Assembly (NCBI GenBank): GCA_048772705.1
Contig: JBLWGC010000207.1
Location: 1-5,332 of the forward strand
Direction: 5' to 3'
Length of the DNA: 5,332 nt
Source: Leidyana gryllorum EB-2025a
Taxonomy: Eukaryota; Protista; Apicomplexa
In this document: in pieces, positions 1 through 5,204 of the stretch
Numbering within the stretch: the first letter of the stretch is position 1
How the letters are laid out: each line of letters starts with the position of its first letter
The notes under the pieces: generated by a model
What the model was told of the DNA's origin: nothing
Seen by the model: only the letters and a program-made list of their open reading frames with translations
Databases searched by the model: none
Program-made: the position numbers and the translations under genes

Positions 1-35
1 AGAAAACGTGTAAAGTGGCGAGCCAAGAACACTTC

Positions 36-115
36 GGTAAGATGGCCGAGTGGTCTAAGGCGCTGTGTTAAGGCCGCAGTCCGAAAGGGCGTAGGTTCGA
101 ATCCCGCTCTTGTCA
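36..115 (+). tRNA. trnL-AAG: tRNA-Leu(AAG), one T-stem mismatch
   Basis: Acceptor GGTAAGA/TCTTGTC+A. Anticodon arm CTGTG-TTAAGGC-CGCAG (AAG at 70-72). Variable arm with GAAA loop. T arm GTAGG-TTCGAAT-CCCGC has an A.C mismatch relative to the paralog at 2645-2724. Confidence 0.9.
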
Positions 116-175
116 GCCGTTGTATCGGTACTCGGTCAGCCACTGGATGCAGAAGGTTTTCCATGTAGAGCGGAT

Positions 176-248
176 GGGCGGCTAGCTCAGATGGTAGAGC
201 GCTCGCTTTGCATGCGAGAGGTACTAGGATCCATACCCAGGTCGTCCA
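176..248 (+). tRNA. trnA-TGC: tRNA-Ala(TGC), T arm damaged (possible pseudogene)
   Basis: GGGCGGC/GTCGTCC+A with G3.U70. CTCGC-TTTGCAT-GCGAG. T arm CTAGG-ATCCATA-CCCAG has a stem mismatch and ATCCA instead of ATCGA. Confidence 0.85.
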
Positions 249-318
249 AACTCAGTAGGGCGACCTGCCGGTAGTTAAATACAGAGACGTCTAACAGAGC
301 GTCGCATATCGCAGCTCC

Positions 319-391
319 CGGCACCGCTAGGCTTCGAAACTGCGACTTTGTGGTAAACAGCTACACGCTTTGTCGACTGAGCTACAAGACC
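319..391 (-). pseudogene. tRNA-Asn(GTT) pseudogene
   Basis: Reverse complement GGTCTTGTAGCTCAGTCGACAAAGCGTGTAGCTGTTTACCACAAAGTCGCAGTTTCGAAGCCTAGCGGTGCCG aligns ungapped to the intact Asn at 2299-2371. D loop, T arm and acceptor are broken. Confidence 0.85.
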
Positions 392-402
392 CAGTTGCAA
401 TG

Positions 403-445
403 TTCTTCCAAGCGAGGAAAAATCATACCTGCAGACCAAACAGCC
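403..445 (-). pseudogene. 5' half fragment of tRNA-Pro
   Basis: Reverse complement GGCTGTTTGGTCTGCAGGTATGATTTTTCCTCGCTTGGAAGAA matches the 5' half of Pro 1634-1705. No T arm; runs into the Asn leader. Confidence 0.8.
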
Positions 446-2109: not shown

Positions 2110-2182
2110 TTCCACTGCCGGGACTTGAACCCGGATATGCGGGTTTCACCCGCACGATCCTAGCCACTTAGACTACAGTGGA
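2110..2182 (-). tRNA. tRNA-Glu body with inverted anticodon arm, reading GAA (Phe)
   Basis: TCCACTG-TA-GTCT-AAGTGGCTA-GGAT-CG-TGCGG-GTGAAAC-CCGCA-TAT-CCGGG-TTCAAGT-CCCGG-CAGTGGA-A. Re-inverting 2133-2160 restores a canonical Glu(TTC) layout. Confidence 0.85.
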
Positions 2183-2724: not shown

Positions 2725-2808
2725 GGAGCGCCCTTGGCTCGCCACTTTACACGCTTCCTGTCTGTGAAGTCTCGAGAAGGGAGGACTTTTGGGGTTGACG
2801 ACCGGAGT

Positions 2809-3163
2809 ATGGAATGGAACAGGAGCCTCAGGCGAATTACGTTGTAAGAAGTCCACTCCTCAACTCCGGGTGGGACGGCATTTACCCGTCGAATATCTGA
2901 TGCCACCACTACAATCAGATGGGTTGTAATGTAAGCACCCCGGGCCGTGATAGTACTTCGGGGCGGTACACCGCACCCAGAACGACATCTTCAACCCCAA
3001 AAGCCTCGCCCCGAAGTACTCTTACCGCCCGAGTTGCTTAGATGGCAACGCATGTGATGGTAGTGGTGGCATCAAATATTCGACGAGCAAATTCCGTCCC
3101 GCCGGGAGTTGAGGAGTGGACTTCTTACAACGTAGTTCGTCTGATACTCCTGTTCTATTCCAT
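2809..3163. repeat. 157-bp imperfect inverted repeat (arms 2809-2965 and 3007-3163, 41-bp spacer)
   Basis: Hand alignment is ungapped, 135/157 identical. Longest perfect run is 30 bp (2838-2867). Confidence 0.95.
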
Positions 3164-3206
3164 CCTGATCGATGCTTCGCCACCTCTACAGCCTCGCTCA
3201 AAGATT

Positions 3207-3477: not shown

Positions 3478-3553
3478 TCTCAGCTGGGCAGACTTCACTC
3501 GGGATTGTACGAGTGAGAGCCGCATATCTTAGCCGACCTTGGAGAGACGTGGA
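3478..3553 (-). pseudogene. tRNA-Glu(CTC) remnant
   Basis: Reverse complement contains GGCTAAGATATGCGG-CTCTCAC-TCGTACAATCC and starts TCCAC. The rest is degraded; ends are approximate. Confidence 0.7.
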
Positions 3554-3766: not shown

Positions 3767-3810
3767 ACCAGAATGCCCTAGTGGGTAAGGCGCTGTGTTC
3801 AGACCCCACT
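3767..3810 (+). pseudogene. 5' fragment of tRNA-Leu(CAG)
   Basis: ACCAGAATGCCCTAGTGGGTAAGGCGCTGTG-TTCAGAC resembles the Leu 5' half (compare TAAGGCGCTGTGTT at 56-69). No 3' half. Confidence 0.6.
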
Positions 3811-3895
3811 CACATGGTCGTTAGTATCTTTCTCCCGCCTTTAAGAGCACTGGCTACCCGAAGAAACCCCAGACTAATTATTTCGATGCTGCATT

Positions 3896-3976: not shown

Positions 3977-4024
3977 TAAGGAGTCGAGTGTCCCTGGGAG
4001 AAAGGGTCGGCTACCGGCCGGACC

Positions 4025-4063
4025 CGCCGTAGTCAGATGCTGTACCAAGTGAGCGAACGCCCG
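4025..4063 (-). pseudogene. Degenerate 5' half of a tRNA, identity uncertain
   Basis: Reverse complement CGGGCGT-TC-GCTC-ACTTGGTA-CAGC-A-TCTGA-CTACGGC follows the TAGCTCAGTTGGTAGAGC pattern. No pairing 3' anticodon strand. Confidence 0.45.
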
Positions 4064-4276: not shown

Positions 4277-4343
4277 GCGTCCATGGTCTAGCTGTCACGA
4301 AGTCTCTCCAGGCAGGGAGTCATGATTGATCCTCGGTGGTGGA
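4277..4343 (+). pseudogene. tRNA-Val pseudogene
   Basis: GCGTCCATGGTCTAG...GTCACGA...GATCCTCGGTGG matches 1301-1373. Anticodon arm destroyed. Upstream flank is also homologous. Confidence 0.75.
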
Positions 4344-4372
4344 GCACCGAACGAAGTCTATAGCGAGCTGTG

Positions 4373-4426
4373 CTGTAAGACCGGCAATCGTACACAGGTG
4401 TTCCGCGTGACGGGCGGAGATACTAA
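4373..4426 (-). pseudogene. tRNA-Asp(GTC) pseudogene, 5'-truncated
   Basis: Plus-strand AGACCGGCAATCG...TTCCGCGTGACGGGCGGAGATACTAA matches 1429-1482. Confidence 0.8.
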
Positions 4427-4505
4427 AGACTTTGGTGGACCTGCCCAATGACTTGCATGGCTCCACCCAAGGCAGATGGACTGTAACTAAGTTTCGCGTT
4501 TCCTT

Positions 4506-4579
4506 GTCGTCCTAGCTCTGTCGGTAGAGCGCAAGCCTCCTAATCTTGCAGTCGCAGATTGAAGTCCCTGTGGGCGGTG
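4506..4579 (+). pseudogene. tRNA-Lys(CTT)-derived pseudogene with CCT anticodon
   Basis: TAGCTCTGTCGGTAGAGCG-CAAGC-CTCCTAA-TCTTG is a Lys-CTT-like body. T arm damaged. Acceptor GTCGTCC/GGGCGGT. Confidence 0.75.
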
Positions 4580-4639: not shown

Positions 4640-4712
4640 TTCCGCTGCCGGGACTCGAACCGGGATGGTGCGGGTAGGAGCCGCATATACCGACCACCTA
4701 GACTAAAGGGGA
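4640..4712 (-). pseudogene. tRNA-Glu-derived pseudogene with CCT anticodon
   Basis: TCCCCTTTAGTCTAGGTGGTCGGTATA-TGCGG-CTCCTAC-CCGCA-CCAT-CCCGG-TTCGAGT-CCCGG-CAGCGGA-A. Acceptor, D and T stems have mismatches. Confidence 0.8.
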
Positions 4713-4911
4713 CGGGTCACCACAGTTGCACTGACGAATGAGGGCAGAAAAGGCCTGAAAATCCTGAGTTCTACACAGGAAACCTGGGGCATCACGCGAG
4801 AGATCCGCGGATCGATAGCAAGGCTGTGCAGCTTTGTCACTGGTCCAGCCTCGGACATGATGAAGAAAACGGAAATGATGGCTCTTATCATGTCGGCAGA
4901 TTTGACACCTA

Positions 4912-4945
4912 TCTAAGGATATAATTCTTCCTTGCCTGGAAGAAG
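4912..4945 (+). pseudogene. tRNA-Pro internal fragment
   Basis: TCTAAGGATATAATTCTTCC-TTGCCT-GGAAGAAG versus Pro TCTAGTGGTATGATTCTTCC-TTCGGGT-GGAAGAAG. Confidence 0.6.
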
Positions 4946-4955
4946 ATTGTAAGTG

Positions 4956-5028
4956 GGTCTTGCAGCTCAGTTGGCAGAGCATGTGGCTGTCAGCCACAAA
5001 GTCGCGGGTTCGAAACCTGTAAGATCCG
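4956..5028 (+). pseudogene. tRNA-Asn-derived pseudogene with GTC (Asp) anticodon
   Basis: Ungapped copy of 2299-2371. Loop CTGTCAG, C8, and a broken acceptor 3' strand (AAGATCC). Confidence 0.85.
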
Positions 5029-5131
5029 GGTTTTACGGCGCTTTACTCTCTCCACGGCACTTATGGTCTTGGACCCTTCAAAGGTCGTAACTCTGAGTAT
5101 TTAAATACGGTGGGTGCACCCGTACGAAGTT

Positions 5132-5204
5132 TGGACGACCTGGGCATCGATCCCAGTACCTCTCGCATGCTAAGCGAGCGCTCTACCATTTGAGCTAGTC
5201 GCCC
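5132..5204 (-). tRNA. trnA-AGC: tRNA-Ala(AGC), intact
   Basis: GGGCGAC/GTCGTCC+A with G3.U70. CTCGC-TTAGCAT-GCGAG. CTGGG-ATCGATG-CCCAG. Confidence 0.96.

What the first reader, a model, noticed from the sequence alone, without database searches (positions are those of the whole stretch)
2110..2182. Glu-to-Phe anticodon switch caused by in-place inversion of the whole anticodon arm
Seen: the gene is on the minus strand, yet plus-strand 2133-2160 (GGAT-A-TGCGG-GTTTCAC-CCGCA-CGAT-CC) is a Glu(TTC) arm in sense orientation, bounded by GGAT/ATCC inverted repeats. On the gene strand the stem still pairs and the loop reads GTGAAAC (U33, anticodon GAA, A37). It has 2 nt before the stem and a 3-nt variable loop, the asymmetry an inversion would produce. 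Glu copies at 3478-3553 and 4640-4712 keep the ancestral order ATATGCGGCT...AC(C/T)CG(C/T)AC.ATCC. One further change (ancestral C32 reads G, position 2143) perfects the hairpin; acceptor, D and T arms are flawless. Known: yeast PheRS determinants are G20, GAA and A73; this RNA has GAA and A73 but C20. Inference: a template-switch micro-inversion changed all three anticodon bases in one step, an unusual route to tRNA remolding. No true tRNA-Phe occurs in the window.
Basis: partly seen in the sequence, partly recalled or inferred. Interest (0 to 1): 0.85.

Follow-up and report, generated by a model that had tools for sequence, protein, structure and literature searches.

The report
Flipped anticodon arm in tRNA copy
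In one copy of a glutamate tRNA gene, a 20-letter piece holding the anticodon has been turned end for end, so it now looks like a phenylalanine tRNA; this is an apparently undescribed way to change an anticodon, but the copy is most likely a fresh, non-working pseudogene.

Summary
In the gene at 2110-2182(-), the 20 nt at 2137-2156, between GGAT/ATCC arms, are the reverse complement of a tRNA-Glu anticodon arm. A relative's intact Glu(CTC) gene (L002) matches the other 53 positions exactly, and the arm 18/20 inverted against 4/20 direct. It is the only clean inversion among 25 copies tested. Two corrections. (1) Every attested parent on this body is Glu-CTC, whose pure inversion gives GAG (Leu); Phe needs a further step. 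One 6-nt patch copied from the T-arm explains it exactly (chance about 7-8%); a TTC parent on this body is possible but not seen. (2) A working tRNA-Phe is unlikely: G32, a G32-C38/U33-A37 closed loop, C20, a shifted junction, Rfam 39 bits against 58 for the parent, in a decaying array. Best reading: template-switch hairpin inversion making a young pseudogene. Source reads were unavailable, so an artefact is not excluded (about 10%). Hairpin-loop inversion is known from rRNA; I found no paper describing it for a tRNA anticodon. Unchecked scan notes report other micro-inversions and many anticodon-shifted copies elsewhere in this genome.

The parts
2110..2182 (-). tRNA-Glu-derived gene, 73 nt, with inverted anticodon arm (apparent anticodon GAA)
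   Evidence: ARAGORN; Rfam RF00005 39.0 bits; 53/53 to L002 Glu(CTC) outside the arm
2137..2156 (+). Inverted 20-nt segment: reads as the Glu arm (A26 to G45) on the + strand. Breakpoints cannot be placed more finely than within the flanking 4-bp repeats
2157..2160 (-). GGAT, 3' strand of the D stem plus one base; left arm of the 4-bp inverted repeat
   Evidence: sequence; DNA fold
2133..2136 (-). ATCC, end of the variable loop and start of the T stem; right arm of the 4-bp inverted repeat
   Evidence: sequence; DNA fold
2143..2149 (-). New 7-nt loop GTGAAAC: G32, U33, anticodon GAA (2147-2145), A37, C38. G32-C38 and U33-A37 can pair, leaving a GAA triloop on a perfect 7-bp stem
   Evidence: 32-38 pairing probability 1.00; 0.00 in the parent
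2140..2145 (-). AACCCG: holds both letters (2145, 2143) that differ from a pure inversion of Glu-CTC; exact reverse complement of the T-arm hexamer 6 nt away
2128..2133 (-). CGGGTT in the T arm: candidate template for the second, 6-nt patch (inferred)
2164..2175 (-). Pol III A box, unchanged from the parent
   Evidence: sequence; identity to L002
2121..2131 (-). Pol III B box, consensus GGTTCRANTCC, unchanged; A-B spacing unchanged
   Evidence: sequence
4640..4712 (-). Decayed Glu-CTC-type paralog in ancestral orientation (loop CTCCTAC; ARAGORN miscalls it Arg-CCT)
   Evidence: 60/73 to L002 Glu
3478..3553 (-). More decayed Glu-CTC paralog in ancestral orientation (loop CTCTCAC)

Best explanation
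A recent, intact tRNA-Glu copy in a dense eukaryotic tRNA array underwent an in-place inversion of its anticodon arm. Steps: (1, shown) the parent DNA can fold into a hairpin, GGAT/ATCC plus the 5-bp anticodon stem; (2, inferred) the replicating polymerase switched to the opposite strand at one 4-bp arm, copied 20 nt backwards and returned at the other arm, an event of type 1-3-2-4; (3, inferred) a second short templated correction fixed the remaining one or two letters: from Glu-CTC a 6-nt patch copied from the T arm, which becomes an inverted neighbour only after the flip; from a hypothetical Glu-TTC a 7-nt copy of the stem's own 5' arm. Either route needs no untemplated change. (4, shown) Because the loop is symmetric, U33 and A37 survive the flip and the anticodon becomes its reverse complement, but C38 becomes G32. 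(5, inferred) The promoter boxes are intact, so the gene may be transcribed, but the RNA has a closed anticodon loop and a shifted D/anticodon/variable junction, has lost the GluRS anticodon determinants and lacks G20. It is probably poorly matured or uncharged: a newborn pseudogene, like the many other decayed copies around it.
For: Arm 18/20 inverted vs 4/20 direct, body 53/53; exact two-event fits from both parents; parent DNA hairpin -7.1/-7.4 kcal/mol, product -9.8/-10.1; all contigs of relatives that span the arm carry the Glu orientation; type 1-3-2-4 inversions are 45% of high-confidence human-chimp template switches (PMC5453318); loop inversions of 7-8 nt seen in rRNA hairpins (PMC8794818). 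Against function: Rfam 39.0 vs 57.8 bits; cloverleaf 10.7 vs 5.1 kcal/mol above the best fold, 32-38 pair closed; the only G32 loop among 31 intron-less genes listed; at least 15 decayed tRNA copies in the same 5.3 kb; nuclear alloacceptor shifts are nearly all terminal and most likely pseudogenes (PMC4981973).
Against: The body has no decay at all, which fits a recent event but also selection. G34, A35, A36, A37 and A73, the main eukaryotic PheRS determinants, are all present (PMC9976931). No reads from the source organism were available, so neither the inversion nor silence is confirmed. The T-arm patch has a 7-8% chance background. Folding energies ignore modifications and mispredict the D arm of the parent too.
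Confidence: 0.75

Rival explanations
1. Technical artefact: the flip arose during whole-genome amplification, library PCR or consensus building, and the genome has an ordinary tRNA-Glu here.
For: No public run holds the flanks (best share 0.06; flanks uncovered); the inverted arm was found in no other data; an unchecked note (s1-580785) suspects a consensus mosaic elsewhere in this assembly.
Against: The arms are 4 bp, far below any assembly word length, so an assembler has no ambiguity to resolve (inference). A double-ended in-place flip plus one or two extra templated letters is not the usual fold-back chimera of amplification (own knowledge). Only one GATC site exists in the parent, so cut-and-religate is excluded. 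The body is error-free against an independent sequence.
Confidence: 0.1
2. A working remolded tRNA: the RNA is processed, charged with Phe through GAA/A37/A73 and reads UUC/UUU; or, less likely, is still charged with Glu and inserts Glu at Phe codons.
For: Perfect acceptor, D and T stems, intact A and B boxes, U33 and A37 kept, A15-U48, U11-A24 and U13-G22 with the adjacent A46 kept; anticodon and A73 are the universal Phe set.
Against: G32 with a Watson-Crick C38 and U33-A37 close the loop; the 32-38 pair tunes ribosome binding (PMC4238358); C20 and G31-C39 instead of G20 and A31-U39, both of which the relative's real tRNA-Phe has (L003); only 28/73 identity to that tRNA-Phe; single copy, seen in no relative; Glu charging depends mainly on U/C34, U35, C36 (E. 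coli data).
Confidence: 0.08
3. Real inversion, but by recombination or repair across an extruded hairpin (cruciform) or by two breaks and re-joining, followed by ordinary point mutations, rather than by polymerase template switching.
For: The end product is the same; small inversions between inverted repeats are also explained this way in plastid DNA (own knowledge); the array shows many rearrangements and chimeras (unchecked notes).
Against: 4-bp arms are very short for homologous recombination; the residual letters match local inverted templates exactly.
Confidence: 0.06
4. A genuine, unusual tRNA-Phe or a Glu/Phe chimera made by gene conversion from a tRNA-Phe.
For: ARAGORN names it tRNA-Phe; unchecked notes report chimeric tRNAs elsewhere in the genome.
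Against: The stem is the Glu stem, the junction asymmetry is the mirror image of Glu, and the relative's Phe arm (TAAGA-CTGAAGA-TCTTA) shares neither stem nor 32/37/38 letters; edit distance 33 to Phe and 2 to Glu after re-inversion.
Confidence: 0.01

Closest known systems
[quoted passage not shown]
   Same: A short fragment is replaced by its own reverse complement with no new repeat; the commonest type (45%) in the human-chimp set.
   Different: Here the fragment is a tRNA anticodon arm, and a second short patch is needed for an exact fit.
Hairpin-loop inversions in rRNA genes (Monttinen, Frilander and Loytynoja 2022, PMC8794818)
   Same: Loop inverted, stem pairing kept, sometimes with a stem-perfecting change; enriched on terminal branches.
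   Different: That study covers rRNA ('anticodon' occurs 0 times). Here the flip includes unpaired junction bases on both sides and rewrites a decoding triplet.
tRNA anticodon shifts / alloacceptor remolding (Rogers and Griffiths-Jones 2014, PMC3923123; Velandia-Huerto et al. 2016, PMC4981973)
   Same: A duplicate tRNA keeps its body and gains another amino acid's anticodon; mostly young and probably non-functional in nuclear genomes.
   Different: Known cases are 71 one-base and 4 two-base changes, and 'inversion' is not mentioned in PMC3923123. Here all three bases changed through an inversion. Replacement of an ancestral gene or conservation is not shown.
tRNA pairs with complementary anticodons (Rodin and co-workers, e.g. 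PMC2669802, seen only in a search list)
   Same: Glu UUC and Phe GAA are such a pair; arm inversion is a concrete mutational link between them.
   Different: That hypothesis concerns opposite-strand coding at the origin of the code; this is one recent local mutation and does not test it.

Membership tests
Template-switch in-place inversion (type 1-3-2-4) | Derived segment equals the reverse complement of the homologous parent segment, flanks unchanged | tested here: met
   18/20 (CTC parent) or 19/20 (hypothetical TTC parent); flanks 53/53
Template-switch in-place inversion (type 1-3-2-4) | One event explains the cluster perfectly | tested here: not met
   Best single event leaves 2 (CTC) or 1 (TTC) differences; a second 6-7-nt templated event gives an exact fit
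Template-switch in-place inversion (type 1-3-2-4) | Short inverted repeats or a hairpin at the switch points | tested here: met
   GGAT/ATCC plus the anticodon stem fold in parent DNA
Template-switch in-place inversion (type 1-3-2-4) | Arose in vivo during replication and is present in native DNA | not testable with these tools
   No run of the source organism was offered
Eukaryotic tRNA-Phe | G34, A35, A36, A37 and A73 | tested here: met
   Sequence; determinant list PMC9976931
Eukaryotic tRNA-Phe | G20; A31-U39 (human PheRS) | tested here: not met
   C20 and G31-C39; the relative's tRNA-Phe in L003 has G20 and A31-U39
Eukaryotic tRNA-Phe | Phe-type body | tested here: not met
   28/73 to L003 tRNA-Phe, 53/53 to Glu outside the arm
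Functional cytosolic tRNA | Open 7-nt loop with pyrimidine 32, U33, purine 37 | tested here: not met
   G32; 32-38 pairing probability 1.00 and a predicted 3-nt loop
Functional cytosolic tRNA | One nucleotide (26) between D and anticodon stems, 4-5-nt variable loop | tested here: not met
   2 nt and 3 nt
Functional cytosolic tRNA | Intact acceptor, D and T stems; A and B boxes | tested here: met
Functional cytosolic tRNA | Expressed, matured and aminoacylated | not testable with these tools
   No RNA run held the stretch
Alloacceptor remolding (strict sense) | Duplicate with the body of one family and the anticodon of another | tested here: met
   Glu body, GAA anticodon
Alloacceptor remolding (strict sense) | Kept by selection: conserved in relatives or replacing the ancestral gene | tested here: inconclusive
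   Not seen in 3 metagenome loci or in the contigs of 2 runs that cover the gene, but none of these is the syntenic locus

The most novel reading that the evidence does not exclude
Inversion of the anticodon arm is a real route by which tRNA genes jump in one or two steps to the reverse-complement anticodon, and this copy is a live product: expressed and charged, reading Phe codons from a Glu body (with Phe, or as a Glu-for-Phe mistranslator). Because U33 and A37 swap into each other, tRNAs with A37-A38 (here Asn, Lys, Met, Thr-CGT, Val-CAC) would come out of such a flip with a fully canonical loop, so some existing tRNA families may have arisen this way unnoticed.
Probability: 0.08. Interest if true: 0.75.

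Novelty: new variant of a known kind. Interest (0 to 1): 0.35.

Why it matters
Surveys of anticodon shifts count only one- and two-base substitutions. It gives a simple, testable rule (new anticodon = reverse complement; new base 32 = complement of old 38), so a flip of a Glu arm is handicapped by G32 while flips of A37-A38 tRNAs would look canonical. Practically it is a source of false tRNA isotype calls. As long as the copy is single, unconfirmed by reads and probably dead, it is a neat mutational specimen rather than new biology.

Tried and rejected
Source reads: the run search gave only three unrelated metagenomes at share 0.06; laid on 1920-2295 they covered only the Thr and Glu genes and no flank, so they give the ancestral state but cannot confirm the flip. 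Pattern scans: 3 metagenome loci, all in Glu orientation; none in viral contigs; no inverted arm in prokaryotic genomes. A phrase search for anticodon, loop or arm inversion found 0 papers; broader searches found only remolding by substitution and rRNA loop inversions; most subscription journals are not in that library. A paper search to name the organism led nowhere. Restriction cut-and-religate rejected: one GATC site only. Point mutation alone rejected: 16 of 20 letters or 8 edits would have to change and land on the reverse complement, while the parent matches its own reverse complement at 2/20 in register. Lack of an oligo-dT terminator rejected as evidence against expression: most intact genes here lack one too. 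The 'hypothetical TTC' line had an indexing slip; searches use the corrected sequence. tRNAscan-SE isotype models were not available; ARAGORN, Rfam RF00005 and direct comparison were used instead.

Full report
Setting. The window is a dense eukaryotic nuclear tRNA array. ARAGORN lists 21 genes on both strands and Rfam 20 tRNA matches. Comparison with intact references shows more than 30 tRNA-derived elements, at least 15 of them clearly decayed. The A34-type anticodons (AAG, AGC, AAC, AGG, AGT) and intron-bearing Tyr relics mark a eukaryote. Other readers' notes suggest an alveolate or apicomplexan; I did not test that. Close relatives with the same tRNA bodies occur in three JGI metagenome contigs (L001-L003) and in phyllosphere and bat-gut runs.

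Observation. The gene at 2110-2182(-) has perfect acceptor, D and T stems, two nucleotides before the anticodon stem, the loop GTGAAAC and a 3-nt variable region. Turning the 20 nt at 2137-2156 around restores a normal junction and ARAGORN then calls Glu(TTC). The decisive comparison is with L002:1849-1921, an intact Glu(CTC) of a relative: 53 of 53 positions outside the arm are identical, and the arm matches 18/20 as reverse complement but 4/20 directly. BLAST finds the opposite-strand match inside the gene (26/28, E 2e-6). In a scan of 25 tRNA copies for any inversion of 6-45 nt that improves the alignment to a reference, this copy gains 15 points; no other copy above 85% identity gains more than 2, and gains of up to 10 occur only in heavily decayed relics. 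The in-window paralogs at 3478-3553 and 4640-4712, all three metagenome loci and all contigs of runs X1 and X2 that span the arm have the Glu orientation, so the flipped state is the derived one. The breakpoints lie within the GGAT/ATCC arms and cannot be placed more finely.

Which parent. Every copy with this body that I could read is Glu-CTC or derived from it: L002 (two copies), L003, and both window paralogs. The one Glu-TTC read in full (L001) differs at ten positions, including the anticodon stem, though it is partly decayed and from another organism. A TTC anticodon on this body remains possible: the window's Ala copies carry TGC, CGC and AGC on bodies 67-68/73 alike, a few TTC contigs aligned, and an unchecked note mentions a Glu(TTC) gene elsewhere in the genome. 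A pure inversion of CTC gives GTGAGAG (Leu-GAG) and leaves two differences, at 2145 and 2143; a pure inversion of TTC gives GTGAAAG and leaves one, at 2143. An exhaustive four-point template-switch search found no single event that is exact, but two events are exact from either parent. From CTC the only solution is a patch AACCCG (2140-2145) copied from CGGGTT in the T arm, six nucleotides away; the two are in inverted orientation only after the flip. A random pair of nearby changes is explained this way in 7-8% of cases at 6 nt, so this is suggestive, not proven. From TTC the change is a 7-nt copy of the stem's own 5' arm. So 'Glu to Phe in one step' is one of two routes; 'Glu to Leu, then Phe' fits the attested parent.

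Mechanism. The parent DNA folds into a hairpin made of the anticodon stem and GGAT/ATCC (-7.1 and -7.4 kcal/mol for the two strands); the product folds at -9.8 and -10.1. In-place inversion without a new repeat is type 1-3-2-4 of the four-point model and made up 45% of high-confidence events between human and chimp (PMC5453318). In rRNA genes 69 loop inversions and 6 inversions with a compensating stem change were found, including 7-8-nt loops, with such events twice as frequent on terminal branches (PMC8794818). The mechanism is therefore known; that it acted here is inference from the anatomy. Unchecked notes list further micro-inversions in this genome's tRNA fields, which would make this one case of a background process.

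Function. For: A and B boxes and their spacing are unchanged; G34, A35, A36, A37 and A73, the main eukaryotic Phe determinants (PMC9976931), are present; the body shows no decay. Against: base 32 is G, the complement of the parent's C38 and so an unavoidable product of the flip, and it is the only G32 among 31 intron-less genes listed; G32-C38 and U33-A37 extend the stem to 7 bp and leave a GAA triloop (pairing probability 1.00, against 0.00 in the parent), and the 32-38 pair tunes ribosomal binding (PMC4238358); the cloverleaf lies 10.7 kcal/mol above the best fold, against 5.1 for the parent (unmodified-RNA energies, comparative use only); the Rfam score falls from 57.8 to 39.0 bits, into the range of the window's damaged copies; G20 and A31-U39 are missing, while the relative's true tRNA-Phe has both (L003); the Glu anticodon determinants are gone. 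A flawless body is what a recent event in a fast-turnover array gives: the Ala copy at 5132-5204 is likewise 73/73 to its L002 counterpart. In primates and flies almost all alloacceptor shifts map to terminal branches and are judged pseudogenes (PMC4981973). Unchecked notes list many other anticodon-shifted bodies in this genome. I put a working tRNA at about 8%.

Artefact. No run of the source organism was available, so the flip rests on the assembly alone. The 4-bp arms are too short to mislead an assembler, a cut-and-religate origin is excluded, and the extra templated letters suggest more than one round of copying; amplification from few cells could still do it. About 10%.

Novelty. A survey of eukaryotic anticodon shifts found 71 one-base and 4 two-base changes and does not mention inversion (PMC3923123). 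A phrase search of 8.4 million open papers for anticodon, loop or arm inversion returned nothing; this library lacks most subscription journals. So the combination, a template-switch-type inversion that rewrites a tRNA anticodon, seems undescribed, while both ingredients are known. One general point follows from the sequence: inversion maps U33 and A37 onto each other and gives the reverse-complement anticodon, and the new loop is canonical only if the old one had A37 and a purine at 38. Among the genes at hand this holds for Asn, Lys, Met, Thr-CGT and Val-CAC but not for Glu. That is a prediction for a database-wide search, not a result.

Verdict. Real in the sequence as given, well explained, probably a newborn pseudogene; a new variant of known kinds; interest 0.35, rising to about 0.75 if it proved expressed and charged or if such flips turned out to have founded conserved tRNAs.

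Noticed in passing
window 2806-2965 and 3007-3166: The 160-nt inverted repeat is a divergently oriented pair of decayed tRNA-Tyr copies with the short intron still recognisable (56/80 and 53/80 to the L002 Tyr gene); it is not protein-coding debris. A third Tyr relic lies near 3985-4063(-).
   Followed up: yes
window 4954-5029 (+) and 4640-4712 (-): ARAGORN's Asp(GTC) is an Asn body (63/73 to Asn 2299-2371) with a changed anticodon; its Arg(CCT) is a Glu-CTC body. Two more apparent alloacceptor shifts, both in decayed copies.
   Followed up: yes
window 4506-4579, 4277-4345, 4373-4444, 943-1022, 3767-3846, 4758-4830: Relics of Lys, Val, Asp, Leu, Leu and Ala genes that ARAGORN does not call.
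   Followed up: partly
window 319-445 (-) and 4902-5028 (+): The 5' half of a Pro gene runs directly into an Asn gene in two places; these two blocks are an inverted repeat of each other (81%).
   Followed up: partly
window 1-261 and 2474-2759: Leu-Ala block duplicated in inverted orientation (92% and 88%); Ala anticodons differ (TGC, CGC; AGC in the third copy at 5132-5204).
   Followed up: partly
whole window: Most intact-looking genes have no run of four T within 100 nt downstream (only Asp 1429 and Cys 686 do), so Pol III termination here may use shorter signals or read through.
   Followed up: partly
L002:431-510 (-): tRNA-Tyr(GTA) with an intron of only 7 nt (ARAGORN i(38,7)), unusually short; may help to identify the lineage.
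   Followed up: no
L002:1849-1921 vs L003:370-442: Compensatory change at the tertiary 15-48 pair (A15-T48 vs G15-C48). The 4-bp GGAT/ATCC repeat exists only in the A15-T48 form.
   Followed up: partly
L003:880-1100: Short stretch that by eye resembles a decayed LTR-retrotransposon reverse transcriptase between tRNA genes; not tested.
   Followed up: no
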